The notes: generated by a model not told the origin, from the letters alone. Positions 40,129-60,300 are shown, counted from the stretch's first letter. The stretch: 64,000 nt of DNA from Anaeramoeba ignava BMAN (GCA_028826165.1 JAPDFW010000137.1:1-64000); one strand, 5' to 3'. Numbers and translations are program-made.

Positions 40129-43100
40129 TTATTTGAGTTTTTCAAATTCATTATTAATCCATTCACTATCTTTCATTGGGAAACCACGAGAAGGAGAATA
40201 AGGTTTTTTACGAGGAACAAAAGAGATGCAATCTGTAACAGGACAAACATCGTAACATAATCCACAACCTGTACAATCATCAGTAATAACAGGTATATGT
40301 GTAACAGAATCGAATTTAATAGCAGAATATCCTGTATCAGCGCAAGTTAAATAACATTCTATTTTAAATTAAATTAAATTAAATTAAATTAAATCAATTA
40401 AATTAAATTAAATTAAATTAAATTAAATTAAATTAAATTAAATTAAATCTTTTAAATAAAATCAATTATTTTAAATTAAATTAAATTAAATTAAATCAAA
40501 TTAAATTAAATCAATTATTTTAAATTAAATTAAATAAATTAAATTAATTAAATTAAATTAATTATTTTAAATTAAATTAAATCAAATTAAATTAATTATT
40601 TTAAATTAAATTAAATTAAATTAAATTAAATTAAATTAAATTAAATTAAATTAATTTAAATTAATTAAATCAAATAAATTAAAATTAAATTAAATTAAAT
40701 TAAATAAATTAAATTAATTAAATTAATTATTTTAAATTAAATTAATTAAATTAATTATTTTAAAATAAATTAAATTAAATCAAATCAAATTAAATCAAAT
40801 TAAATTAAATTAAATTAAATTAAATTAAATTAAATTAAATTAAATTAAATTAATTAAATTAAATTAATTAAATTAAATTAAATTAAATATTTTAAATCAA
40901 ATTAAATCAATTAAATTAAATAAATCAATTAAATTAAATTAAATCAATTAAATTAAATTAAATTAAATTAAATCAAATCAAATCAAATCAAATTAAATTA
41001 AATCAAATCAAATCAAATTAAATCAAATTAAATTAAATTAAATTAAATTAAATAAATTAAATCAAATTAAATTAAATTAAATTAAATCAAATCAAATTAA
41101 ATTAAATCAAATTAAATCAAATTAAATCAAATTAAATCAAATTAAATTAAATTAAATCAAACTAAATATTTTAAAATAAATTAAATTAAATTAAATTAAT
41201 TAAATTAAATTAAATTAAATATTTTAAATTAAATATTTTAAATTAAATCAAATTAAATTAAATCAAATTAAATATTTTAAATTAAATCAAATTAAATATT
41301 TTAATTAAATTAAATCAAATCAAATTAAATATTTTAAATTAAATCAAATTAAATTAAATAAATTAAATTAAATTAAATAAATTAAATTAAATTAAATATT
41401 TTAAATTAAATCAAATTAAATTAAATATTTTAAATCAAATAAATTAAATTAAATAAATTAAATTAAATTAAATTAAATTAAATCAAATCAAATAAATTAA
41501 ATTAAATTAATTATTTTAAATCAAATCAAATCAAATTAAATTAAATCAATTATTTTAAATTAAATTAAATTAAATTAAATCAAATTAAATCAATTATTTT
41601 AAATTAAATTAAATAAATTAAATCAAATTAAATCAAATTAAATTAAATTAAATTAAATATTTTAAATTAAATTAAATTAATTAAATCAAATTAAATTAAA
41701 TCAAATTAAATCAAATTAAATTAAATATTTTAAATTAAATATTTTAAATTAAATTAAATTAAATCAAATTAAATTAAATCAAATATTTTAAATAAAATTA
41801 AATTAAATAAATCAAATTAAATTAAATTAAATTAAATTAAATTAAATTAAATTAAATTAAATTAAATAAATCAAATTAAATTAAATTAAATTAAAATAAA
41901 TTAAATCAAATTAAATATTTTAAATTAAATTAATTAAATAAATTAAATACTCCCGCAATTAATGCATTTAGTCTCATCCGCTATAAAAGCAACAACATGA
42001 TCAACATCTTCACTAGGAAGTTGGGATGTCCCAACAATTCGATTAACAGTAAGACCAACAATATCATTGATTCTGGGAATCTTATCAACTTTGCCAAGCT
42101 CAACAAACTCATTCTCATCAAACTTAACATCACTAAAAGAGAATTTCTTAAGAGCTTCCTTCTTAGCCTTGCGATTCTCAATCTCAAAATCTCCGAAACG
42201 AGGAAGTGCCTTGGAATATGAAAGATCAACATGCTGGCGATGTCTTTGGAATTGGAACTCCCAAGAATTGCGGAGATCGGGACGACCAAGCATGTACAAA
42301 AGACATCTGAGACCTGTGATATAGTCGTTGACAACAGTGTAGTCTTGGTTCTGTATCGATGAGCAGAATTGGATCACAGAGGCTCCTGCATAGATGTATT
42401 GAAGAGCCGCCTCTGCAGAGTCGCATCCACCAATACCAAGCACTGGGGATGGACTGATCTGTTTGTATGCAGAGGAAATAGCCTTGAGTGCTACAGGTCG
42501 CACAATGTTTCCGGAGACTCCTCCGTAGGAAGTTTTCTGGATGCTTCTGTCCTTCCCAACTGCAGGCCAACCTGTGGAATCGAATCGGATACCAGCAACT
42601 CCTGACACGGTATTGATGCCTGATATTCCTGTTGCGCCTCCCTTTTTGGCTGCTTCGGCAATGGCTGCTACGGATGTTGCATTGGGTGTTAATTTGGCGA
42701 AAAACGGAATCTTGACTGCTGCTGCGACCCATTTGCAAACTTGCTCAACTGCTTCAGGATTGGTGCCGATGGTCATTCCAAAAGCCTCTCCATGACGTCC
42801 AGAAATATGAGGACAACTTAAATTCAATTCAAGCGCGTCTGCTCCGTATTCTTGTGATACTTTCGCCAGTTTTTCCCATTCGGTTTGTTCGTAGATCGCC
42901 ATGATTGACGCAATCACAATGCGGTCGGGGAAGTCTTGCTTCAGCTCCTTGATCGCCTTGCACCAATACTCGCTTGTCTTCTCGGAAATCAGCTCAATAT
43001 TCAAGAATCCTTGTTGATGCGGCCCGAAGAGATTGTGGTCAGCGCTCTTTGTGATACGAGGGGAAACGTTAGTCGATACGTTGTTGTCAAGCGCAAAAGT

Positions 43101-46100
43101 TTTTGTGACTGCAAAGCCCCATCCAGCTTCAAATGAACGACGAATCATCGCAGCTGTTGTTGATGGTGGTGAGCTTGCCAATCCAAAAGGATTAGGGAAA
43201 GTCAATCCGGCAACATCGACACTCAGATCGACAAGATCAACCTCTGTAAAGAATCCAGGAAGATTTGGTTCTGCATTTGCAATTTCTTTGTCGCCGTATT
43301 TCATCTGGAGATATCTGTGAATCCCCCACGCTGCTGTCTTGCCGTCGTTTGAGGCTTCCACTGTCATTTTCGATCCTACAATATCTCCTCCCGCAAAGAC
43401 AATCTCGTTTTTCTTGGATTGCATTGTTTCTGCTTCCACAACAGCAAGTCCACGCTCAAAATCAACAAGCGGATCAAGTGCGCGCATAAATGGCGAGTCT
43501 CTCATCTGCGCACCGAAAGCTGATACAATGAAGTCGCATTTAACAAATGATTTCTGATCTGCGTCAATTTCATATACGCCCTTATCGTTCTTTGCGAACC
43601 GCACAAATTCAACCCCGAAAATCTTACCCTCGCGCACATCCACTTTGTTGGGTGTTGAGAACGGGATCAACTCCACTCCCTCCTCTCGCACAGAGACCAA
43701 CTCTTCTTCAACTGCGCGCATGTCGTCTGTGGATCTTCGGAAGCATAATGAAACGCGCTCTGCGCCGCATCTGAACGCTGTAAGACAGCAATCCATGGCA
43801 GTGTCTCCCGCACCAAGCACGATAACATGCCCGTGAAGTTTGGGTAGTTCTTCAAGTTTCTGCACAATGCCTGGTTTTGATGCGAGTGCGGCCTTCTGGA
43901 GAAATGTTTTCGAGGTGTAGAATCCGCTCTCTTCAGTCAGATCCTTAAACGCATCAATGTAATTCGCAAACGGTAATCCAACCCCTAAGAAGATAGCCTC
44001 GTAGTTGTCTTTCTTCAATGTTTCGTAGTTGAATTTCTCTGTTCCAAACTCAGAATTATATTGGATTTTAACTCCCAGATCCTCCATAAGTTTTACTTCC
44101 CATTTGACAGCTTTATATGGAAGTCGGAACGCTGGGATTTCTGCAGAGGATATTCCTCCTGGGAAAGCGTTCTTCTCGAATACTGTGACATTCTTGTATC
44201 CAAGTCTTCCCAGAAACGATCCGCAACTGATGCATGATGGTCCGCTTCCGATTAATGCAATTTTCGCATCAAAAGATTTCGGTAATTTGTCAAGTGCTGG
44301 TAAACTTGGATCCCGAATTTGTGGGATTTTCATTTTCATAAATGTTTCCACTGCGAAGTGTTGTAATCCAGATATGTTGATTGCTCCCCGGCTTGTGTTG
44401 GAAAGATTGCAAGCTCCTGAACAAAGCTCGCTTACTGGGCATACCATTCCGCATGATAATCCCACTGGGTTCTCTGATAAGATCATCTTTGCTGCTCCGT
44501 AAAAGTTCCCTGTTGACATGCATTGAATGAATTGTTTTATATCGACTTGTGCTGGGCAGGATTTTGTACATGGTGCATCTGCGCATTTGAGGCATCTTCT
44601 TGCTTCTACGATTGCTTCTTCTTGTGTGAGTGTTGTTTTTTTGATATCTTCGAAGTTATTATGTAGTTCGCATCCCTTTTTAAATTCATTTTAAAATTTA
44701 TTTTTAAAATTTATAATTAAACTCATTTTAAATTTATAATTATATTTATAATTATATTTATAATTATATTTATAATTATATTTATAATTATATTTATAAT
44801 TATATTTATAATTATATTTATAATTAAATTTATAATTATATTTATAATTATATTTATAATTATATTTATAATTATATTTATAATTAAATTTATAATTATA
44901 TTTATAATTATATTTATAATCAAATTTATAATAAAATTTATAATTAAATTTATAATTAAATTTAAAATTAAATTTATAATTAAATTTATAATTAAATTTA
45001 TAATTATATTTATAATTAAATTTATAATTAGATTTATAATTAGATTTAAAATTAGATTTATAATTAAATTTATAATTAAATTTATAATTAAATTTATAAT
45101 TATATTTATAATTAAATTTATATTTAAATTTATAATTAAATTTATAATTAGATTTATAATTAGATTTAAAATTAAATTCATAATTAAATTTATAATTAAA
45201 TTTATAATTAAATTCATAATTAAATTTATAATTATATTTATAATTATATTTATAATTATATTTATAATTAAATTTATAATTATATTTATAATTATATTTA
45301 TAATCAAATTTATAATTAAATTTATAATTAATTTTTATAATTAGATTTATAATTAAATTTATAATTAAATTTATAATTAAATTTATAATTAAATTTATAA
45401 TTATATTTATAATTAAATATTATAATTATATTTATAATTATATTTATAATTAAATTTATAATTAAATTTATAATTAAATTTATAATTAAATTTATAATTA
45501 AATTTATAATAAAATTTATTTTAAAATTTATTTTACAATTTATAATTAAATTTATAATTAAATTTATAATTAGATTTATAATTAAATTCATAATTAAATT
45601 TATAATTATATTTATAATTAAATTTACAATTAAATTTATAATTAAATTTACAATTAAATTTATAATAAAATTTATAATTAAATTTATAATTAAATTTATA
45701 ATTAAATTTATAATTAAATTTACAATTAAATTTATAATAAAATTTATAATTAAATTTATAATTAAATTTATAATTAAATTTAAAATTAAATTTATAATAA
45801 AAATTTATAATTAAATTTATAATAAAATTTATAATTAAATTTATAATTAAATTTATAATTAAATTTATAATTAAATTTATAATTAAATTTATAATTAAAT
45901 TTATAATTAAATTTATAATTAAATTTATAATTAAATTTATAATTAAATTTATAATTAAATTTAAAATTAAATTTATAATTAGATTTATAATTAAATTTAT
46001 AATTAGATTTATAATTATATTTATAATTAAATTTATAATTAAATTTATAATTAAATTTATAATTAAATATATAACTAAATTTATAATTATATTTATAATT

Positions 46101-48194: not shown

Positions 48195-50448
48195 TCAATT
48201 TTGTCCACAAACTGAAGCAACAAACTCAAATAATTCTTTCTCTTCAATCCGATCATTAATACTATTTTTAATTCTTCTGAAAGTACTTAGACCATTAGGC
48301 AAAATTTTATCAGGTCTTTCTCTCAAAACAACCCAAGTATTAGTTTGACTATCAAAAGAGCATTCAACAATTTTATTATCAAAATATGACAACTGAGGAT
48401 TTCTTATTGAACTGACAATTACCTCATTGCCTTTACTCATGACAACAAAATTCGCAAGACTTCGATCATTTAAATCAATTCGAACTCGAAAATCAGCTGT
48501 GTTCAAATATGGTGGTTTCCATTTCAATAATTTTTCAAAGCGATCTGGTGTGTATTTCTCATTTACTGGTGTGAAAATTAATCCATCTGAATTATGTTTT
48601 AATTCTTTCACATAATTTTTTAATATTGTTTTTGTGTATTTCAACTCAAACATTTCTTTGAATACAATTTCAAATTCTGCTTTTGTTTTTTGTTTTGTTT
48701 TTTGTATTCTTTCAAGAAGTTCGCGAATTGCTCCTAATCGTGTATCAAGATGTTTTTCAATAAAAGATCTGCCATCAAAACAAAGTAAATCATAAACCAA
48801 AAAAACTAATTTCGTTTGAATTTGATTTTGATTTTGGATTTGAATTTGAATTTGAATTTGATTTTCATTTTGATCTAAATTTTGATCTTGATTTGAATTT
48901 TGATTTGAATTTTGATTCGAATTTTGATTTGAATTTTGATTTGAATTTTGATTTGAATTTGGTTTTGCTTCAATATATTCTTCAACCATTTCTCCATCAA
49001 CTATTGTAATTCCTAAATGAGGAAAATTCATATCAACTTTATAAAAACTAAAATTTCTATCACACAAATAAGTTTCACTATCTAAAATAACCATAAAAAA
49101 TCTTGTTCCATCTGCTTTCCAAGTCACCCAAAATCTCTGTTTCTTTAAAAAATCTATATTGTTTTTATCTAAAGAAACTGGTTGAGCTCCTGGAAAATGC
49201 TCATCTGGGAATTGTTTGTCGGGAAATAAATTTAATACAGCTTTTCGTAGTTTTTCTTGTTCTTGATCATTAACTTTTTGGAATTGAATTTCTGGATTAA
49301 CAACTCCAGTATGTCCGTTTTGATTATTATTGTTTTGATGATAATTATTTTGATGATAATTATTTTGATGATAATTATTTTGATGATAATTATTTTTGAT
49401 GATAGTTGTTTTGAATTTGATTTTGAATTTGATTTTGATGATAATTATTTTGATGATAGTTGTTTTGATTTTGAATTTGATGATAATTATTTTGAATTTG
49501 ATTTTGATGATAATTATTTTGAATTTGATTATTTTGGTGATAATTATTTTGATGATAGTTGTTTTGATTTTGAATTTGATTTTGATGATAATTATTTTGA
49601 TGATAATTATTTTGAAGATAATTATTTTGATGATAATTATTTTGATGATAATTATTTTGATTTTGATTATAATTATTTTGAATTTGATTTTCATTTTGAT
49701 TTTCATTTTCATTTTCATTTTCATTTCCATTTTCATTTTCATTTTCATTTTCATTTTCATTTTCATTTTCATTTTCATTTTCATTTTCATTTTCATTTTC
49801 ATTTTGATTTTCATTTTCATTTTCATTTTCATTTTCATTTTCATTTTCATTTTCATTTTCATTTTCATTTTCATTTTCATTTTTATTTTCATTTTCATTT
49901 TCATTTTCATTTTCATTTTCATTTTCATTTTCATTTTCATTTTCATTTTCATTTTCATTTTCATTTTCATTTTCATTTTCATTTTCATTTTCATTTTCAT
50001 TTTCATTTTCATTTTCATTTTCATTTTCATTTTCATTTTCATTTTCATTTTCATTTTCATTTTCATTTTCATTTTGATTTTCATTTTCATTTTCATTTTC
50101 ATTTTCATTTTCATTTTCATTTTCATTTTGATATCTAATTTGATTTTCATTTTGATATCTAATTTGATTTTCATTTTGAATTCTAATTTGAATTAGATTT
50201 TGAATTCTAATTCGATTTTTAATTTCATTATTATTTTTATTATTTTGATTTTTATAATAATTATAATAATTCTGTTTTGGATTTGCATCTTTTTGTATAA
50301 TTCTTTCTTGTTCGTTTTTTATTTTTATTTTTTGTTCTTTTTTATTTTCCTTTCTTTTTCTTTTAATTTCTTCTTGTTCTTGTTCTTGTTTTTGTTCTTG
50401 TTCTTCCCCATTTCTTTTATTATTTTGTAAATGTTTTCTTGAATTCAT
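48195..50448 (-). CDS. mRNA capping enzyme guanylyltransferase with a long low-complexity N-terminus; 1-nt frame break near 49390
   Basis: Nucleotidyltransferase motifs FPGAQPVSL, KADGTR (I), IVDGEMV (III), FLVYDLL (IIIa), DGLIF (IV), LLKWKP (V), LRERPDK..PN (VI). ORF 49390..50448 supplies the likely start and switches frame within the QNNYH repeats. Confidence 0.85.
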
Positions 50449-50975: not shown

Positions 50976-53900
50976 ATGGACAGTTCATATCAAACACTTA
51001 TTAATGAATGGAAAAAGATCGGTTGTGTAAAAGTCAAATATTTTTCTCAATTTTTAATGAATCAATTTTTATTTTTTTTTTATAAAAAATTTAATCAATT
51101 TAATCAATTTAATCAAAGAATGTTGTTCAACCGATAAAAACTGTTAATTTAAGACTTGAACCAAAAAAAGTTTTATTATCACAAAATGATGTTATTTTAA
51201 CAAAAGATAATCAAGTTTATCAATTTGATATTCAAGTATTTTTAATCAAAACAAAAATTTAATTTAAATTTATAAGATCAAAAAAAACTCAAATTAAATT
51301 AAAAAACAACTATAAAATTTATTTAACAATTTAATTAACAATTTAATTAACAATTTCAAGATCAATTTAATTAACTATTTAATTAACTATTTAATTAACT
51401 ATTTAATAAATGATTTCAAGATCAATTTAATATTTGATTTCAAGATCAATTTAATAATCCATTTAACAATTCATTTATCAATTTATTTATCAATTTATTT
51501 ATCAATTTATCAATAAATTTATAATTAATTTCTTAATTTCTCAATATAATAATCAAATCAAAACTTTAAAATCAATCTAATAATCCATTTAACAATAAAT
51601 TTAATAATAAATTAATTTCTTAATTTCTCAATATAATAATCAAATCAAAACTTTAAAATGAAATTATCAATCCATTTAACAATTTATTTATCAATTTAAT
51701 AATCCATTTAAAAATAAATTAATTTCTTAATTTCTCAATATAATAATCAAATCAAAACTTTAAAATGAATTTATCGATCCATTTAACAATTTATTTATCA
51801 ATAAATTTAATATTTGATTTCAAGATCAATTTATCTATCAATTTATTTATCAATTTATTTATCAATTTATTTATCAATTTGTTTATCAATTTATTTATAA
51901 ATTTGTTTATCAATTTATTTATCAATTTATTTAATAATTTATTTATCAATTTATTTATCAATTTATTTATCAATTTATTTATCAATTTATTTATCAATTT
52001 GTTTATCAATTTATTTATCAATTTATTTAATAATTTATTTATCAATTTGTTTATCAATTTATTTATCTATTTATTTATCTATTTATTTATCAATTTATTT
52101 ATCAATTTATTTATCAATTTATTTATCAATTTATTTATCAATTTATCTATCAATTTATTTATCAATTTAATAATCCATTTAACAATAAATTTAATATTTG
52201 ATTTCAAGATCAATTTATTTATCAATTTATTTATCAATTTATTTATCAATTGATTTATCTATTTATTTATCAATTTATTTATCAATTTATTTATAATTAA
52301 TTTCTTAATTTCTCAATATAATAATCAAATCAAAACTTTAAAATGAATTTATCGATCCATTTAACAATCGATTTAACAATTTATTTAATAATAAATTAAT
52401 TTCTTAATTTCTCAATATAATAATCAAATCAAAACTTTAAAATGAATTTATCGATCCATTTAACAATTTATTTATCAATAAATTTAATATTTGATTTCAA
52501 GATCAATTTATCTATCAATTTATTTATCAATTTATTTATCAATTTATTTATCAATTTGTTTATCAATTTATTTATAAATTTGTTTATCAATTTATTTATC
52601 AATTTATTTAATAATTTATTTATCAATTTATTTATCAATTTATTTATCAATTTATTTATCAATTTATTTATCAATTTGTTTATCAATTTATTTATCAATT
52701 TATTTAATAATTTATTTATCAATTTATTTATCAATTTATTTATTAATTTATTTATCAATTTATTTATCAATTTGTTTATAATTTATTTATCAATTTATTT
52801 ATCAATTAATCTATCAATTAATCTATCAATTTATTTATCAATTTATTTATCTATTTGTTTATCTATTTGTTTATTATTTATCAATTTATTTATCAATTTA
52901 TCTAAAAGAATGAATCTCAAATCGCAAAATTAAAAAAACATGAATCTAAAATCAAATTCATTTTGAGACAAGAAAATACACTTATAACATCAGATAGCGA
53001 AGGTCTTATCGTTATCTGGAATTTAATCGAAAAAAGAATCCAAAGATTAATCAAGCTAACAAGTTCTGTCACAAGCATGACTATATACAAAACAACACTA
53101 TTTGCAAGCTCTCTTACTCCATCAATCATTCACCAATGGGATTTTAAAACAGGAGAAAAAATTACTCAATATGAAGGTCATGAAAAATCTATTAATCAAA
53201 TCCAATTTTTACCTCAAAAATCTACTCTCTATTCTTGTTCAGATGATGGAACTGTTATTGCTTGGTCTACTTCTGTTAGTTTATTCTTTCGAAATAATAT
53301 TTATATTTATATTTATATTTTAAATCAAATTATCAATTTAGGATCAAAACAAAAAAATCCGTTTAAAATTCCAAGGACATTATGATCCAGTTGTTTGTTT
53401 TTGTATTATGGAAGAAAAAGATTTGCTTTTTACAGGTTCAAAAGGTAATTCTTTCTTTTTTTCAAAATTCAAAATTCAAAATTCAAAATTCAAAATTGAT
53501 TTTTTTTTGATTTGATTTGGAAATGTAGATCTTACAGTTATTTGTTGGGATATGAAAGTAAAAAATATTTCCATTTCTTTCTGTTTTTGTTTTTCTTTCT
53601 TGTTTTCTTTTATATCATAATTTTTCAAAAAAAACAAAAACAAACAAACAAACAAAAAGAATGCTCAACCAATCCAAAAATTTTATGATTTTTCATCATT
53701 GACTACAAAAATGATCGCAGAAAAAAATCAAGTATTTATTGGATTTGATGATGGCACAGTTATCGGTATCAAACCAAATAGAAGAAAATCATTTGAAGTT
53801 GGAGTGTATCCAGGACACCAACAAAAGAATTACAGAAATTCGCACCTTTGAAAAAAGAATAATCACATCATCAGAAGATGAAACAATTCGAATTTTTTCA

Positions 53901-56900
53901 ATAGACTCGAAAAAATCAAAAATACTTTGTGAAGGACACAAATCGAGTGTAAAAACCTTTTCCACTTCTAACGAAGGAAATCTTGTATCAATAGATGCAG
54001 ATGGAGAAGTATTTTTTTGGCCAGTAAAAATTTTAAAAGCAGAAAAGGAAAACAAAAAGAAAACAAAGAAAACAAAAACAAGAACAAACGAAGAAATTCC
54101 CAAACAAGAAATAGAAAAATCAATACTATCATCCAAAAAACTGAATGAAAAAGTAACAGTGTTTATTGACGGAAAACAATATCAAGGAGATTCAAACAAA
54201 AGTATTTTGGAAGTTTGCAGAGAAAATGGGATTGATATCCCGTCTTTGTGTTATCATCCACGATTGCATCCACTTTCCACATGCAAATGCTGCGTTGTGC
54301 AAATTGAAACCACAGCAAACTGTTTCCGCAAAGCGTGTGCATGTGCAACGGAAATTCGGGATGGGATGAAAATAATCACAAATTCAAATGAAATCAAAGG
54401 GTTTCAAAGAAACGCAATTTTGGAGTTGCGACAAAAACAGCGCAGTCGAGCATTAACTCTCAAAGACGAGAGTTTCGACAAATCAACGGAATTTGGACGT
54501 TTACTCACGAATGTATACGATAAATTTGTGGATAATTCCAATGGGGCAATTTCTATTGATTTATCCAAATGCATTGATTGCGCAAGATGTGCTCAAGTCT
54601 GCGACAAAATCCAAGGCATGTCAATCATCTCGTTTCCTGCGCGATCCATTGGCGCCATTGAAACAGTTCTACGTACAAAAGGGAATTTTCTTTCGGAATC
54701 ATCTTGTATTGCTTGCGGACAGTGTTCCGTTTTTTGCCCCACTGATGCCATCTCAGAATTTGATCAAACTTCTGTTTTAAAGCAGCAAATCAAGCTTGGC
54801 GACAAGAGACTTGTTGTTGGAATTGCACCTTCTGCAAGAGTCTCTATTGCAGAGGAGTTTGAAATGGAACCAGGTGCTATTTCTGTTGAAAAGTTTGTCT
54901 CTGCTTTGAGAATGCTTGGTTTTGATGATGTTTTCGATCTTCAGTTTACTGCTGATTTAACAATTATGGAAGAGGGAACTGAGTTGTTAAAAAGATTGAA
55001 AGATCCAAATGCAGTTCTTCCAATGTTCACATCCTGTTGTCCTGCTTGGATTAATATGGTGGAAAAAGTATATTAATTAAAAAGAATTTCAATCCAAAAA
55101 TTTATTTATTTATTTATTTATTCTATAATAAGTTGTATCCATTTCTAATACCTCATCTTTCAAGTGTAAAATCTCCTCAACAAATATTTGGAGCAATTGT
55201 TAAAACTTTTTATGCTCATAAAATCAAAATTGATCCACAAAATATTTATTGTGTAACAATTACACCTTGTACTGCAAAAAAACAAGAAATTCATCGTGAA
55301 GAAATGAAATCTTCAGGTTTTCAAGATGTGGATCTTGCTTTAACAGTAAGAGAAATAGGAAAAATGCTGAGAGAAATTTCGATTAATTGGGAATCAATTA
55401 AAGAAACATCATTTGATGATCCTCTTGGAAAGTCTTCTGGTTCTGGTTCTTTATTTGCGTCAACTGGTGGAGTTATGGTAGATTTCGATTTAATATTGTT
55501 TTAAATATTTTAAATATTTATTTAATATTGTTTTAATAATATTTTAAATATAGGAAGCAGCAATAAGAACTGCATATGAAATTGAAACCAAAAAAACATT
55601 TCCAAAATTGGTATTCCAGGAATTAAGAGGATTAGAAAACATAAAACAAACAACAATAGAATTTGAAGAAAGAAACACTAAAGTTAGTTGTAGTTAACAG
55701 TGGAGCATCAATACACAAACTAATCAACGATTTCCAAAAGGGATTAATAACATTCGATTTTGCAGAGGTGATGGCATGCCCAGGAGGATGTCTTGGAGGC
55801 GGAGGACAGCCACGTTCACATATCAACATTTTACCCAAAAGAATACAAGCAGTTTATGACAACGAATTTTCACTTCCATATAGAAAATCACACACAAACA
55901 AATCAATAATGAAAATTTATGAAAAATTTCTGAACGAACCAATGTCAGAAATATCAAGAAAATTACTTCACACAAAATATCGACCAAACGCGCATCAAAG
56001 TGAAGTCAAACAAAACTCAATCAATATGTTTAAATTTGTTATGGAAGGTCTTAGTGAACATAACTCTGTCCTTGTTTTATTCGGATCTCAAACTGGAACT
56101 GCTGAAATGGCTGCAATTAAAATTACACAAATTTTATTAGAATCCAAAATCAAAGCAAGACTTTTTGAAATGAATAATTATCCCATTACAAATTTATCTT
56201 CAGAAAAATTCGTTATTCTTATCACTTCCACTTTTTGGGAAGGATCTTTTCCTGAAAATGCAATCCAATTTTGGAAAGATTTGCAATCCTTCTCCTTCAG
56301 ATTGAAAAACATTAAATATTCCATTTTTGGTTTAGGTAATTCAACTTATACTCATTTTAATCATGCAGGTCGATTGTTGGATATTCAATTAAAAAAATTA
56401 GGAGCTCATTGTTTTTTAAAAATGGGAGAAGGTGATTATCAAGCTCCAGATGGGTAAATCAAAAATTCAAATCAAATTTAAATCAAAATTAAATCAAAAT
56501 TTAAATCAAAAATTAAATCAAAATTTCAAATCAAAATTTAAATCAAAAAATCAAAAATTAAATCAAAATCAAATATTAAATCAAAATTAAATCAAATTAA
56601 ATCAAAAATTAAATCAAAAATTAAATCAAAAAGGTATTAAATCAAAATAAATCAAAATCAAATATTTAAATCAAAAATTAAATCAAAAAAATCAAAAATT
56701 AAATAAATCAAAAATTTAAAAAAATTTAAATCAAAATTAAATCAAATATTAAATCAATATTAAATCAAAATTTAAATCAAAATTTAAATCAAAATTAAAT
56801 CAAAAATTAAATCAAATATTAAATTAAATTTAAATCAAATATTAAATCAAAATTAAATCAAATTTAAATCAAAATCAAATCAAAAATTAAAATTTATTTT

Positions 56901-56914
56901 TATTTAGTTATTAA
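50976..56914 (+). CDS. hydA: WD40-repeat, [FeFe]-hydrogenase (2Fe-2S, 2x[4Fe-4S], H-cluster, small-subunit region) and flavodoxin fusion; two apparent +1 frame breaks
   Basis: Exons 50976-51026, 51119-51235, 52909-53274, 53342-53444, 53529-53557, 53660-55067, 55133-55477, 55554-56453 and possibly 56908-56914. WD40 repeats (YEGHEKSINQI..LYSCSDDGTVIAW). Fe-S motifs LCYHP..CKCC..AC, CIDCARCAQVC, CIACGQCSVFCP. H-cluster motifs FTSCCPAW, TPCTAKKQE, EVMACPGGCLGGGGQP. Flavodoxin motifs LFGSQTGTAE..TSTFWEG..IFGLGNSTYTHFN. Confidence 0.85.
51470..52900. repeat. Intronic composite repeat: (ATCAATTTATTT)n, a five-copy unit of about 50 bp and a duplication at about 677-bp offset
   Basis: AATTTCTTAATTTCTCAATATAATAATCAAATCAAAACTTTAAAAT at about 51527, 51614, 51721, 52299 and 52398. 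ORFs 51765 and 52442 begin identically. Confidence 0.85.
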
Positions 56915-57381
56915 ATTTAAATTTAAATCAAATATTAAACCAAAATTAAATTTTAAAAATTTAAAAAAAATCTACAAAATTTAAATGAGATTTTAAATCA
57001 AAAAAACAAAAAAAACAATTTTTCAAATCAAATCAAATCAAATCAAATCAAAATTTTTTCTTTTATTTTAAATCAAAAAAAACAAATTAAATCAAAAATT
57101 TAAATAATTTTGTAATTTTTTGGGAATTTTGATAAAAGACTTGATTTTTAAATAAAAACAAAACAATTTTCAAATCAAATCAAATCAAATCAAATCTTTT
57201 CTTTTAGTTTTAAATTAAATTGAATTGAATTTTTGGGAATTTTATAAAAGGCTTGATTTTTGTAAATTGAATTAAATTGAATTAAATTGAATTGAATTGA
57301 ATTGAAAAAAAAAGAATGAATGAATGAAAATCAAAAATCAAAAATCAAGAATTTAACTTCTGAATTAGAAAATTTCTTTTT

Positions 57382-60300
57382 TTATAAGAAATATTCTGGA
57401 ATTTTTTTCTTTTGAGGAGTTTGTCTTGTTTCATCAGGAGCAGCATCAAAAACCTTAAAATTTCTATCTAAATTATCTTGAATTTCAAGAATAGCAGCAG
57501 AATTACCGCATCTATAATAATAATTGGGAGCTGACCAAACAGTAACTAATGATTTATTAAACATATAAAGATATCCTTCCATAATAAGTTGATGTGCTCG
57601 GCATATTAAACTTAAATTGTTAATTTTGGAAAATTGCATCACTGGTTCTGATCCAAAAATAAATCCAGCTCCTCTTGGTCCATTTCCCCAACCTTCAAGT
57701 TCTTTTTTTATCAAAAAATTTTAATTTTAATTTTAATTTTAAATTTTAATTTTAATTTTATTTTTAATTTTAATTTTAAATATAATTTTAATTTTAATTT
57801 TAATTTTAATTTTAATTTTATTTTAATTTTAATTTTAAATTTTAATTTTAATTTTAATTTTAATTTTAATTTTAATTTTAATTTTAATTTTAATTTTAAT
57901 TTTAAATTTTAATTTTAATTTTAATTTTAATTTTAAATTTAAATTTTAATTTTAATTTTAATTTTAATTTTAAATTTTTAATTTTAATTTTAATTTTAAT
58001 TTTAATTTTAATTTTAATTTTAATTTTAATTTTAATTTTAATTTTAATTTTAATTTTAATTTTAATTTTAATTTTAATTTTAATTTTAATTTTAATTTTA
58101 ATTTTAATTTTAAATTTTAATTTTAAATTTAATTTTAATTTTAATTTTAAATTTTAATTTTAATTTTAATTTTAATTTTAATTTTAATTTTAATTTTAAT
58201 TTTAATTTTAATTTTAATTTTAATTTTAATATTCAAATTGATAAAGAATTACCTTCAGGATCACTCCAAAGTAAATCACACATTGCACCTTCATGTGGAA
58301 CTTCTAATTTTCTATCAATTACTTGAATCTAAATTTTCATTAAAATAATTTTTGTTTTTAAATAATTTTTGTTTTTAAATAATTTTCATTAAAATAAATT
58401 GAATTTTCTTTTTTGATAAATTTACTTGATCAATTGTTGAAACTGAAGGAGATAAACCACCATGAACACAGAAAATTTCTCCTCCAACAAGAGCAGCTAA
58501 TGGAAGATAATCAAAAACTTCAGTACAATATCTCCAAACATTTGCATTAGTATATCTTCTTAAACACTCTTCATAAAATCCATAAACCTTTTTTAATTTT
58601 AATTTTAAATATTATTTTAATTTTAATTATAAATTATAATTTTAAATTTAATTTTAATTTTTATTTCAATTTTAATTATAAATTATAATTTTAATTTTAA
58701 TTTTAATTTTAATTTTAATTTTAATTTTAATTTTAATTTTAATTTTAATTTTTATTTTAATTTTAATTTTAATTTTAATTTTAATTTTAATTTTAATTTT
58801 AATTTTAATTTATTTTAATTTTAATTTTAATTTTAAATTTAATTTTAATTTTAATTTTAATTTAATTTTAATTTTAATTTTAATTTTAATTTTAATTTTA
58901 ATTTTAATATAATTATAATTTTTATTATAATTCTAATTTGAATAAATTTACTTGAGTAATTTGTCTACTTTCGTGATTTCCTCTAAGTAAGTAAATTCGA
59001 TCAGGGTAACGAACTTTAAGAGCAAGAAGTAATAAAAAGGTTTCAAGAGAAAAATAACCACGATCAACATAATCTCCCATAAAAAGATATTTTGTTTTTG
59101 GACAAAAACCCCCAATTTTAAATAATTCTTGTAAATCATAAAATTGTCCATGAATATCTCCACAAATCTAATCAATTTAATTATAAATTTAATTATAAAT
59201 TTTATTATAAATTTTATTATAAATTTAATTATAAATTTAATTATAAATTTAATTATAAATTTAATTATAAATTTAATTATAAATTTAATTATAAATTTAA
59301 TTATAAATTTAATTATAAATTTAATTATAAATTTAATTATAAATTTAATTATAAATTTAATTATAAATTTAATTATAAATTTAATTATAAATTTAATTAT
59401 AAATTTAATTATAAATTTAATTATAAATTTAATTATAAATTTAATTATAAATTTAATTATAAATTTAATTATAAATTTAATTATAAATTTAATTATAAAT
59501 ATAATTATAAATTTAATTATAAATATAATTATAAATTTAATTATAAATATAATTATAAATTTAATTATAAATTTAATTATAAATATAATTATATATATAA
59601 TTATAAATTTAATTATAAATTTAATTATAAATTTAATTATAAATATAATTATAAATTTAATTATAAATAAAATTTAATTATAAATTAAATTATAAATTTA
59701 ATTATAAATTTAATTATAAATTTAATTATAAATTTAATTATAAATTTAATTATAAATATAAATATAATTTAATTATAAATTTAATTATAAATTTAATTAT
59801 AAATTTAATTATAAATTTTATTATAAATTTAATTATAAATTTAATTATAAATTTAATTATAAATTTAATTATAAATTTAATTATAAATTTAATTATAAAT
59901 TTAATTATAAATTTAATTATAAATTTAATTATAAATTTAATTATAAATTTAATTATAAATTTAATTATAAATTTAATTATAAATTTAATTATAAATTTAA
60001 TTATAAATTTAATTATAAATTTAATTATAAATTTAATTATAAATTTAATTATAAATTTAATTATAAAATTTAATTATAAATTTAATTATAAATTTAATTA
60101 TAAATTTAATTATAAATTTAATTATAAATTTTATTATAAATTTAATTATAAATTTAATTATAAATTTAATTATAAATTTAATTATAAATTTAATTATAAA
60201 TTTAATTATAAATTTAATTATAAATTTAATTATAAATTTAATTATAAATTTAATTATAAATTTAATTATAAATTTAATTATAAATTTAATTATAAATTTA

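What the first reader, a model, noticed from the sequence alone, without database searches (positions are those of the whole stretch)
50976..56914. WD40 propeller fused to a catalytic-type [FeFe]-hydrogenase and a flavodoxin
Seen: the last WD40 repeats (RITEIRTFEKRIITSSEDETIRIFS..CEGHKSSVKTF..VSIDADGEVFFW) lie in the same open frame (53739-55076) as the ferredoxin-like and H-cluster domains. The WD40-hydrogenase join therefore does not depend on my splicing model. H-cluster motif L3 and the flavodoxin share ORF 55663-56457. Established: hydrogenase fusions to flavodoxin/CysJ-like domains occur in some anaerobic protists, but I know of no described N-terminal WD40 hydrogenase. Inference: the propeller may scaffold or localise a hydrogenase that lacks an obvious organellar presequence, for example in the cytosol or for H2/redox signalling. 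The domain trio also parallels three separate cytosolic Fe-S assembly proteins: Cia1 (WD40), Nar1 (hydrogenase-like) and Tah18 (flavodoxin-containing).
Basis: partly seen in the sequence, partly recalled or inferred. Interest (0 to 1): 0.88.

Follow-up and report, generated by a model that had tools for sequence, protein, structure and literature searches.

The report
WD40-hydrogenase-flavodoxin gene, probably decaying copy
This is a real gene of the anaerobic amoeba Anaeramoeba ignava that joins an eight-bladed WD40 docking domain to a catalytic-type iron hydrogenase and a flavodoxin. It belongs to a gene family found only in this genus, which is deposited but apparently never discussed, and this copy looks broken.

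Summary
ORF 53739-55076 carries the last WD40 blades, a 2Fe-2S domain, two 4Fe-4S motifs and the start of the H-cluster domain. ORF 55663-56457 carries motif L3, the small-subunit domain and a flavodoxin.

The locus is the deposited protein KAJ5066683.1, "iron hydrogenase [Anaeramoeba ignava]". The join is not an assembly chimera. Three further A. ignava paralogues and at least eight A. flamelloides proteins share the architecture, and they form one clade (SH-aLRT 99). In searches of 1.8 and 5.8 billion proteins, WD40 plus Fe_hyd_lg_C appeared only in Anaeramoeba. The scan had already noted the same fusion on another piece of this genome (s1-689359).

The nearest relatives are the CysJ- or flavodoxin-fused, presumed cytosolic hydrogenases of other anaerobic protists.

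This copy has two one-base frame breaks, which the deposited model hides with coding-like "introns". It lacks the last flavodoxin helix and has 10.7% changes at family-invariant sites, against 1.8-3.5% in its sisters. It is probably a young pseudogene (about 0.65); otherwise these are assembly errors.

The CIA (Cia1/Nar1/Tah18) parallel is not supported. The propeller has eight blades and is not Cia1-like, and a separate Nar1 candidate exists. No reads could be obtained.

The parts
50976..51026 (+). Exon 1: start codon and N-terminal helix (MDSSYQTLINEWKKIGC).
   Evidence: Identical to aa 1-17 of the deposited protein P0153. Homologous to the N-termini of P0001 and P0152. A GTAAAA donor follows.
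51119..51235 (+). Exon 2: first WD40 blade.
   Evidence: P0153 aa 18-56. The paralogue on C1 has the same exon, aa 17-59.
51236..52908 (+). Intron of 1673 nt made of microsatellite repeats, GC 11%.
   Evidence: GT...AG ends. The matching intron of the C1 paralogue is about 300 nt.
52909..53274 (+). Exon 3: WD40 blades 2-4.
   Evidence: Pfam WD40 1.8e-9 and several propeller families. tblastn with P0001.
53342..53444 (+). Exon 4: WD40 blade.
   Evidence: Part of P0153. GT-AG borders. The C1 paralogue has the same small exon.
53529..53557 (+). Exon 5: 29-nt WD40 micro-exon (DLTVICWDMK).
   Evidence: Part of P0153. GT-AG borders.
53660..55067 (+). Exon 6: WD40 blades 6-8, about 40 aa of K/E/S-rich linker, the 2Fe-2S domain, two 4Fe-4S motifs, and the start of the H domain with L1 (TSCCPAW).
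   Evidence: The paralogues C1 and C104 have the same exon as one unbroken frame of about 470 codons.
53823..53828 (+). Frame break 1: one surplus base in the run AAAAGA. GHQQK is in one frame and ITEIRTFEKR in the next.
   Evidence: Alignment A1, tblastn frames and sequence. Skipping one base restores the conserved blade.
53806..53858 (+). Approximate span of the 'intron' of the deposited model that bridges break 1. It deletes a conserved WD40 segment.
   Evidence: GC 36%, like the CDS (33%) and unlike the seven real introns (9-19%). The segment is coding in all paralogues.
55133..55477 (+). Exon 7: middle of the H domain with L2 (TPCTAKKQE).
   Evidence: Fe_hyd_lg_C 3.6e-34. The intron positions after NMVEK and after GGVM are shared with C1 and C104.
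55554..56457 (+). Exon 8: end of the H domain with L3, the small-subunit-like domain and the flavodoxin; stop at 56455-56457.
55672..55677 (+). Frame break 2: one surplus base in GAAACA. IEFEER is in one frame and LKLVVVNSGASI in the next.
55683..55740 (+). Approximate span of the 'intron' of the deposited model that bridges break 2. It deletes LKLVVVNSGASIHKLINDFQK of the H domain.
   Evidence: GC 34%. The segment is coding in the paralogues.

Best explanation
The locus is KAJ5066683.1 of Anaeramoeba ignava. It is one of four paralogues of an Anaeramoeba-specific family with this architecture: an eight-bladed WD40 propeller, a flexible linker, a 2Fe-2S domain, two 4Fe-4S clusters, an H-cluster domain, a small-subunit-like domain and a flavodoxin.

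Shown here: the fusion is encoded in one open frame in several loci and in two species. The family is one clade. The catalytic, Fe-S and FMN motifs are conserved. The maturases HydE, HydF and HydG are present in the genome.

Inferred: the family is a cytosolic offshoot of the CysJ- or flavodoxin-fused 'long' hydrogenases of anaerobic protists. In it, electrons pass between the FMN, the Fe-S relay and the H-cluster (2H+ + 2e- <-> H2). The propeller, on a floppy tether, docks the enzyme to a partner protein or structure (odds about 0.5).

This copy is most likely a recently inactivated paralogue (about 0.65). It has two one-base frame breaks, no terminal flavodoxin helix, and accelerated change, mostly in the propeller.
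For: Identity: 404/405 residues match P0153, which is named.

Join within one ORF. The same holds at C1, C104 and C127.

Distribution: PF00400 together with PF02906 was found only in Anaeramoeba, among 1.84e9 representatives and 5.8e9 proteins.

Phylogeny: the 12 WD40-hydrogenases form one clade (SH-aLRT 99), apart from the plain HydA clade.

Motifs. PF10588 is absent, as in the CysJ fusions.

Localisation: the family has no presequence, whereas plain HydA proteins start with ML... extensions. CysJ-fused enzymes are predicted to be cytosolic (PMC4989108; PMC10703272).

Propeller: pLDDT 92 and pTM 0.88, with eight-bladed best matches at TM 0.84-0.87.

Full-length model: pTM 0.43, with the linker below pLDDT 50.

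Maturases: HydE, HydF and HydG are present.

Decay of this copy: two frame breaks; the bridging 'introns' have GC 34-36% against 9-19% in real introns; the paralogues are unbroken at both sites; the YLTxLxPW helix is absent; 26 of 244 invariant sites are changed, against 4 of 222 in P0001, p = 9e-5. Five other long ORFs of the window (10.6 kb in all) are unbroken, which argues against a high indel error rate.
Against: The frame breaks may therefore be leftover Nanopore errors, and the splicing and the fused transcript are unverified for this copy.

Apart from the two breaks there is no stop in 1106 codons, and every cofactor ligand is intact. If this is a pseudogene, it is very young.

Cytosolic location, FMN binding, H2 activity and a docking role for the propeller are all inferred.

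The sister group of the clade is unresolved.

The Fe-S region of the full-length model is of low confidence, so the low pTM is only weak evidence for a free propeller.

Stairs et al. 2021 (Curr Biol) could not be read and may mention the architecture.
Confidence: 0.7

Rival explanations
1. The window copy is intact and functional. On this reading the two frame breaks are assembly errors in short A runs, and the true product is a protein of about 1106 aa like its sisters but with a shortened flavodoxin end.
For: Skipping one base at each site gives 1106 codons without a stop in very AT-rich DNA. All H-cluster, Fe-S and FMN motifs are intact. The assembly is Nanopore-based (PMC11550330).
Against: The runs are only 3-4 A long, and the assembly also used Illumina reads. 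The paralogues and 10.6 kb of other long ORFs in the window are unbroken. The missing terminal helix and the 10.7% changes at invariant sites are independent signs of relaxed constraint.
Confidence: 0.3
2. The family consists of H2 or redox sensors or adaptors rather than metabolic enzymes. On this reading the H-cluster and FMN report the redox state, and the propeller passes that signal on by binding a target, as the sensory (group C) hydrogenases do through other output domains.
For: WD40 propellers are typical adaptor modules. The best structural matches include the substrate receptors Fbw7 and Cdc4. Two family members, P0004 and P0037, have degenerate catalytic motifs. One A. flamelloides model adds B-box and filamin domains. 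The family is expanded in A. flamelloides.
Against: Ten of the 12 members keep the proton-transfer Cys, the Lys and Glu of L2, and L3, as catalytic group A enzymes do. There is no PAS or other known sensory domain. The clade lies among group A type sequences.
Confidence: 0.15
3. The trio is a fused cytosolic Fe-S assembly (CIA) device, equivalent to Cia1 + Nar1 + Tah18.
For: There is a domain-level resemblance only: WD40, a hydrogenase-like domain and a flavodoxin. Nar1 is known to bind the Cia1-containing targeting complex (PMC13451876, listed).
Against: The propeller has eight blades, whereas Cia1 has seven (general knowledge), and Cia1 is not among the 60 best PDB sequence matches. The catalytic residues and the small-subunit domain are kept. 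There is no C-terminal Trp. No FAD or NADPH domain is present. A separate Nar1-like gene ending in ...LTTNW lies at C90:248061-249640.
Confidence: 0.03
4. The fusion is an artefact: a chimeric assembly, or two neighbouring genes merged by annotation.
For: The deposited model does contain two invented introns.
Against: The join lies inside one ORF of raw DNA here and at three other loci. It recurs in independent assemblies of A. flamelloides strains.
Confidence: 0.01

Closest known systems
CysJ-fused and flavodoxin-fused 'long' [FeFe]-hydrogenases of anaerobic protists (Trichomonas, Pygsuia, Stygiella Fe-hydrogenase 2, Paratrimastix, Carpediemonas 'CysJ-fused', Trimastix and Carpediemonas flavodoxin forms)
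   Same: The order 2Fe-2S, two 4Fe-4S, H domain, small-subunit domain, flavodoxin is the same. Both lack the PF10588 His-ligated cluster domain and an N-terminal presequence. These are the best non-family hits, at 40-45% identity. They are predicted to be cytosolic (PMC4989108, PMC10703272).
   Different: They have no WD40 propeller. Most carry FAD_binding_1 and NAD_binding after the flavodoxin, which this family lacks. The tree does not resolve whether the family arose from within them.
Plain hydrogenosomal-type HydA of Anaeramoeba (P0310, P0327, P0307) and clostridial-type group A hydrogenases
   Same: They share the H-cluster motifs L1-L3, the Fe-S relay and the small-subunit domain.
   Different: They form a separate clade (SH-aLRT 100). 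They carry the PF10588 domain and ML... presequences, and have no WD40 or flavodoxin.
Blastocystis HydA with a C-terminal flavodoxin (PMC2428068)
   Same: A hydrogenase followed by a flavodoxin without a full CysJ (abstract and listing; otherwise general knowledge).
   Different: It is organellar and has no WD40. It was not compared by sequence here.
CIA proteins Nar1/CIAO3, Cia1/CIAO1 and Tah18/NDOR1
   Same: The same three fold classes occur, as separate proteins.
   Different: See the membership test. The catalytic residues are kept, the propeller has eight blades, no FAD or NADPH domain is present, there is no C-terminal Trp, and a separate Nar1 candidate exists.
WD40-BAR-SH3 protein of A. 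ignava (G000:C70:299567-301897) and A. flamelloides P0264
   Same: It has the closest propeller outside the family: 32% identity over aa 19-345, E 1e-44, against 1.6e-24 for the next non-family WD40 protein. It is also N-terminal and ends in the same ...WP motif.
   Different: BAR and SH3 domains follow the propeller instead of a hydrogenase.

Membership tests
[FeFe]-hydrogenase, catalytic type (HydA, group A-like) | Fe_hyd_lg_C domain above the Pfam cut-off | tested here: met
   Three exon pieces score 108, 119 and 39 bits against a cut-off of 22.1. Together they cover profile positions 1-245.
[FeFe]-hydrogenase, catalytic type (HydA, group A-like) | H-cluster motifs L1 TSCCPxW, L2 MPCxxKxxE and L3 ExMACxxGCxxGGGQP, with all four Cys ligands and the proton-transfer Cys | tested here: met
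   FTSCCPAW, TPCTAKKQE (Met replaced by Thr) and EVMACPGGCLGGGGQP.
[FeFe]-hydrogenase, catalytic type (HydA, group A-like) | Maturases HydE, HydF and HydG in the genome | tested here: met
   HydE scores 309 bits, over the cut-off. HydG has three loci split by introns. HydF pieces cover profile positions 6-385 but each piece is under the cut-off.
[FeFe]-hydrogenase, catalytic type (HydA, group A-like) | Uninterrupted reading frame | tested here: not met
   Two +1 breaks at 53823-53828 and 55672-55677. The paralogues are intact.
[FeFe]-hydrogenase, catalytic type (HydA, group A-like) | H2 evolution or uptake activity | not testable with these tools
   Needs a matured recombinant protein.
Flavodoxin/CysJ-fused long eukaryotic hydrogenases | Flavodoxin_1 directly after the small-subunit domain, with the FMN motifs | tested here: met
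   Flavodoxin_1 4.9e-30. GSQTGTAE, TSTFWEGSFPENA and GLGNSTY are present. The last helix is missing in this copy.
Flavodoxin/CysJ-fused long eukaryotic hydrogenases | FAD_binding_1 and NAD_binding_1 (a full CysJ) | tested here: not met
   Absent in the window and in all family members. The gene ends at 56457.
Flavodoxin/CysJ-fused long eukaryotic hydrogenases | Branches within that group in an H-domain tree | tested here: inconclusive
   The backbone is unresolved.
Nar1/CIAO3 | Loss of the catalytic H-cluster environment, no small-subunit domain, and a C-terminal Trp | tested here: not met
   The motifs are kept, Fe_hyd_SSU is present, and no family member ends in Trp. A separate candidate ending in ...LTTNW lies on C90.
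Cia1/CIAO1 | Seven-bladed WD40 propeller with specific similarity to Cia1 | tested here: not met
   Tested on paralogue P0001. The model has about 33 strands. The best folds are eight-bladed (TM 0.84-0.87), while seven-bladed ones reach 0.65-0.69. Cia1 is absent from the 60 best PDB sequence hits.
Sensory group C [FeFe]-hydrogenase (HydS) | PAS domain and altered proton-transfer Cys | tested here: not met
   No PAS hit. TSCCP is kept.

The most novel reading that the evidence does not exclude
The intact family members are active cytosolic hydrogenases that the propeller places at a particular cell structure. One example would be membranes next to the hydrogenosome-symbiosome interface, given that the nearest propeller sits on a BAR-SH3 protein. 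So placed, H2 or reducing power would be delivered locally to the sulfate-reducing symbionts, or sensed there. This would be the first hydrogenase positioned by a built-in protein-docking domain.
Probability: 0.15. Interest if true: 0.8.

Novelty: new variant of a known kind. Interest (0 to 1): 0.5.

Why it matters
Anaeramoeba lives by handing hydrogen from its hydrogenosomes to sulfate-reducing symbionts held in a dedicated symbiosome. A lineage-specific, expanded family of presequence-less hydrogenases with a built-in protein-docking propeller would add a second, possibly positioned, route for H2 or redox exchange. It would also be a new fusion type for [FeFe]-hydrogenase classification. The intact paralogues KAJ5077271.1 and KAJ5068775.1 are ready targets for expression and pull-downs. 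For annotation, the locus shows gene models that hide frameshifts behind invented introns.

Tried and rejected
Neither the frame breaks nor the transcript could be checked.

Transcript-derived fragments: a search with the junction ORF found no near-identical proteins of 245-779 aa.

Missing C-terminal exon: local alignment of paralogue tails against 56400-57420, and a motif scan of the whole window, found nothing.

Tiny GT..AG introns (16 nt and 11 nt) as an explanation of the frame changes: rejected, because the paralogue alignment places the shifts in coding A runs.

Literature: no held paper describes a WD40-hydrogenase. Stairs et al. 2021 is not held.

Structure prediction: the first full-length run, with alignment A2, failed. 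The second gave only pTM 0.43, with the Fe-S domains below pLDDT 50, so no inter-domain geometry can be claimed.

Rfam: no RNA family in the window.

The window was searched ORF by ORF by reference, and full-length questions used the deposited paralogues. A joined reading was made only in a local script, to count stops.


Full report
**What is at the locus.** The window is extremely AT-rich eukaryotic DNA (GC 1-47% per 2 kb).

Pfam places the following on the first ORF:
- WD40-type propeller hits at aa 22-118
- Fer2_4 at aa 137-216
- Fer4 motifs at aa 271-339
- Fe_hyd_lg_C profile positions 1-88 at aa 356-445

The piece 55133-55480 holds Fe_hyd_lg_C positions 88-188. The last ORF holds positions 200-245, then Fe_hyd_SSU and Flavodoxin_1. 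The WD40-hydrogenase join is therefore a property of raw open reading frame, not of a splicing model.

**Identity.** A search of 1.84 billion representative proteins with the junction ORF gave four best hits of 1115-1158 aa, or of 4122 aa for P0002. Three of them carry an N-terminal extension of about 280 aa. These are 'iron hydrogenase' or hypothetical proteins of Anaeramoeba ignava and A. flamelloides, and Pfam shows WD40 + Fer2_4 + Fe_hyd_lg_C + Fe_hyd_SSU + Flavodoxin_1 in each. P0002 is discussed under "Other observations".

A second search found P0153 = KAJ5066683.1 / A0A9Q0L7X9, 1070 aa, from a 122,110-base contig. It matches the window ORF at 404 of 405 residues. The window is therefore A. 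ignava, and this gene is already deposited as 'iron hydrogenase'. The genome paper (PMC11550330) describes Nanopore plus Illumina assemblies. Neither its text nor its supplements mention this architecture.

**The fusion is real and forms a family.**
- In the window's own genome the junction ORF matches three more loci whose single open frames span the last WD40 blades and the hydrogenase: C1:1685502, C104:1010447 and C127:99481.
- In C1 and C104 one exon of about 470 codons runs from WD40 blade 6 to motif L1. The introns after NMVEK and after GGVM sit at the same positions as in the window.
- A region-restricted search of 5.8 billion proteins listed PF00400 together with PF02906 only for Anaeramoeba. 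It listed three A. ignava proteins (a fourth is the divergent P0004) and seven A. flamelloides clusters (an eighth is P0037). Several of these clusters have members from more than one assembly.
- An H-domain tree of 52 sequences puts all 12 WD40-hydrogenases in one clade (SH-aLRT 99). That clade is apart from the plain Anaeramoeba HydA clade (SH-aLRT 100). Its sister group is unresolved.
- The fusion therefore arose once, before the two species split, and then expanded, mostly in A. flamelloides.

That agrees with the paralogues found here.

**Closest relatives and enzyme type.** After the family, the best hits are the CysJ-fused hydrogenases of Stygiella, Paratrimastix, Barthelona, Chilomastix and Carpediemonas. 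The flavodoxin-only forms of Trimastix and Carpediemonas come next.
- Like those, the family lacks the PF10588 cluster domain that plain HydA and bacterial group A enzymes carry.
- The literature treats the CysJ-fused forms as presequence-less and probably cytosolic, possibly NAD(P)H-dependent (PMC4989108; PMC10703272).
- The window copy and nine other members keep L1 TSCCP, L2 (M/T/V)PCxxKKxE, L3 MACPxGCxGGGGQP, all Fe-S cysteines and the FMN motifs. P0004 and P0037 are degenerate.
- HydE, HydG and HydF are present in the genome.
- Family N-termini begin directly with a short helix or with the first blade. Plain HydA proteins begin with ML... extensions.

**The propeller.** AlphaFold2 on P0001 aa 1-350 gives pLDDT 92 and pTM 0.88, with about 33 strands.
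- Foldseek's best matches are eight-bladed propellers (Tako8, ODA16, Rsa4/Notchless, Fbw7/Cdc4) at TM 0.84-0.87. Seven-bladed ones reach 0.65-0.69.
- By sequence the domain is a generic WD40, and Cia1 is not among the 60 best PDB hits.
- The nearest propeller elsewhere in the genome (32% identity, E 1e-44) is the N-terminal domain of a WD40-BAR-SH3 protein on C70.
- A full-length model of P0001 has confident propeller, H-domain and flavodoxin parts, but a linker below pLDDT 50 and pTM 0.43. This fits a tethered propeller. It is weak evidence, because the Fe-S domains were also poorly modelled.

**The CIA parallel fails.** The propeller is eight-bladed and not Cia1-like. The H domain is catalytic in type, carries a small-subunit domain and lacks the C-terminal Trp of Nar1. 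No FAD or NADPH domain follows the flavodoxin. A separate Nar1-like gene (MACPFGCLNGGGQ ... LTTNW stop) lies at C90:248061-249640.

**This copy is damaged.** Alignment with the paralogues shows that the deposited model lacks two conserved segments that are present in the window DNA in a shifted frame.
- At 53823-53828 (AAAAGA), GHQQK is in one frame and ITEIRTFEKR in the next.
- At 55672-55677 (GAAACA), IEFEER is followed by LKLVVVNSGASIHKLINDFQK in the next frame.
- With seven GT-AG introns (GC 9-19%) and one base skipped at each site, the locus reads 1106 codons without a stop.
- The deposited model instead splices out about 53806-53858 and 55683-55740. Their GC of 34-36% matches coding sequence (33%), not introns.
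- The copy has no counterpart of the terminal flavodoxin helix (YLTxLxPW..., helix 1111-1132 of P0001) anywhere downstream.
- It differs at 26 of 244 sites that are invariant in nine other members, against 4 of 222 for P0001 and 8 of 226 for P0152 (p = 9e-5 and 0.004). At least 14 of the 26 fall in the propeller.
- Five other long ORFs in the window (10.6 kb in all) are unbroken. At the error rate implied by two breaks in 3.3 kb, that would happen with probability about 0.002.

I therefore favour a young pseudogene (about 0.65) over assembly error (about 0.3).

**Mechanism.**
- Shown: the architecture, the motifs, the clade and the presence of the maturases.
- Inferred: intact members are cytosolic enzymes in which the FMN and the Fe-S relay exchange electrons with the H-cluster, while the propeller docks the enzyme to a partner.
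- A sensing or adaptor role is the main rival for the family (about 0.15).

**Other observations.** The window also holds a GC-rich dihydropyrimidine-dehydrogenase-like ORF, which may be laterally acquired. P0002, the 4122-aa Cyanophora model, carries seven Fe_hyd_lg_C matches and no WD40, and looks like merged tandem hydrogenases.

Noticed in passing
window 41943-44519 (-): A single 858-aa ORF with GC about 47% in a genome of roughly 15-20% GC. Pfam finds Fer4_20 + Pyr_redox_2 + DHO_dh, a dihydropyrimidine-dehydrogenase-like fusion. The composition suggests lateral acquisition.
   Followed up: partly
window 48195-50174 (-): An mRNA capping enzyme (mRNA_cap_enzyme + mRNA_cap_C) preceded by several hundred residues of KM/KI low-complexity repeats in the same ORF. 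An NQ/NS-rich tract also sits inside the catalytic region.
   Followed up: no
window 51236-52908: The second intron of the gene has grown to 1673 nt of microsatellite-like repeats. The matching intron of the C1 paralogue is about 300 nt.
   Followed up: partly
L011 928-2481 (-) = G000:C1, about 6 kb from the P0001 gene: A 517-aa intron-less hydrogenase-like ORF with several 4Fe-4S motifs and the motifs TSCC / GPCFSKKQE / MACKGGC. It looks like a different, bacterial-looking hydrogenase type, next to the WD40-hydrogenase paralogue.
   Followed up: no
L009 721-2055 (-) = G000:C129: A 444-aa protein with only an H domain, degenerate motifs (SSSCSPW, MRCSLK, LACEQGC) and a presequence-like N-terminus.
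   Followed up: no
L018 1744-2343 (+) = G000:C90:248061-249640: A Nar1/CIAO3-like gene. Its last exon has MACPFGCLNGGGQ and ends in ...LTTNW, matching the C-terminal Trp typical of Nar1.
   Followed up: partly
L021 1477-3807 (+) = G000:C70: A 776-aa protein with an eight-blade-type WD40 domain, then BAR and SH3 domains. It holds the closest relative of the hydrogenase-fused propeller.
   Followed up: partly
P0335 (A. flamelloides, 1707 aa): A deposited model that places B-box and filamin domains in front of the WD40-hydrogenase-flavodoxin. It is either a larger fusion or two merged genes.
   Followed up: no
P0002 (EukProt, Cyanophora paradoxa, 4122 aa): A model with seven Fe_hyd_lg_C and seven small-subunit matches, three flavodoxins and one FAD_binding_1. 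It is 50% identical to the window's H domain. It is likely a tandem array of hydrogenases merged into one model, or a contaminant.
   Followed up: no
same genome, other pieces (scan notes): Many first-stage notes report ankyrin-BTB genes with chains of 3-nt micro-exons in this genome. The hydrogenase gene here has a 29-nt exon but no 3-nt exons.
   Followed up: no
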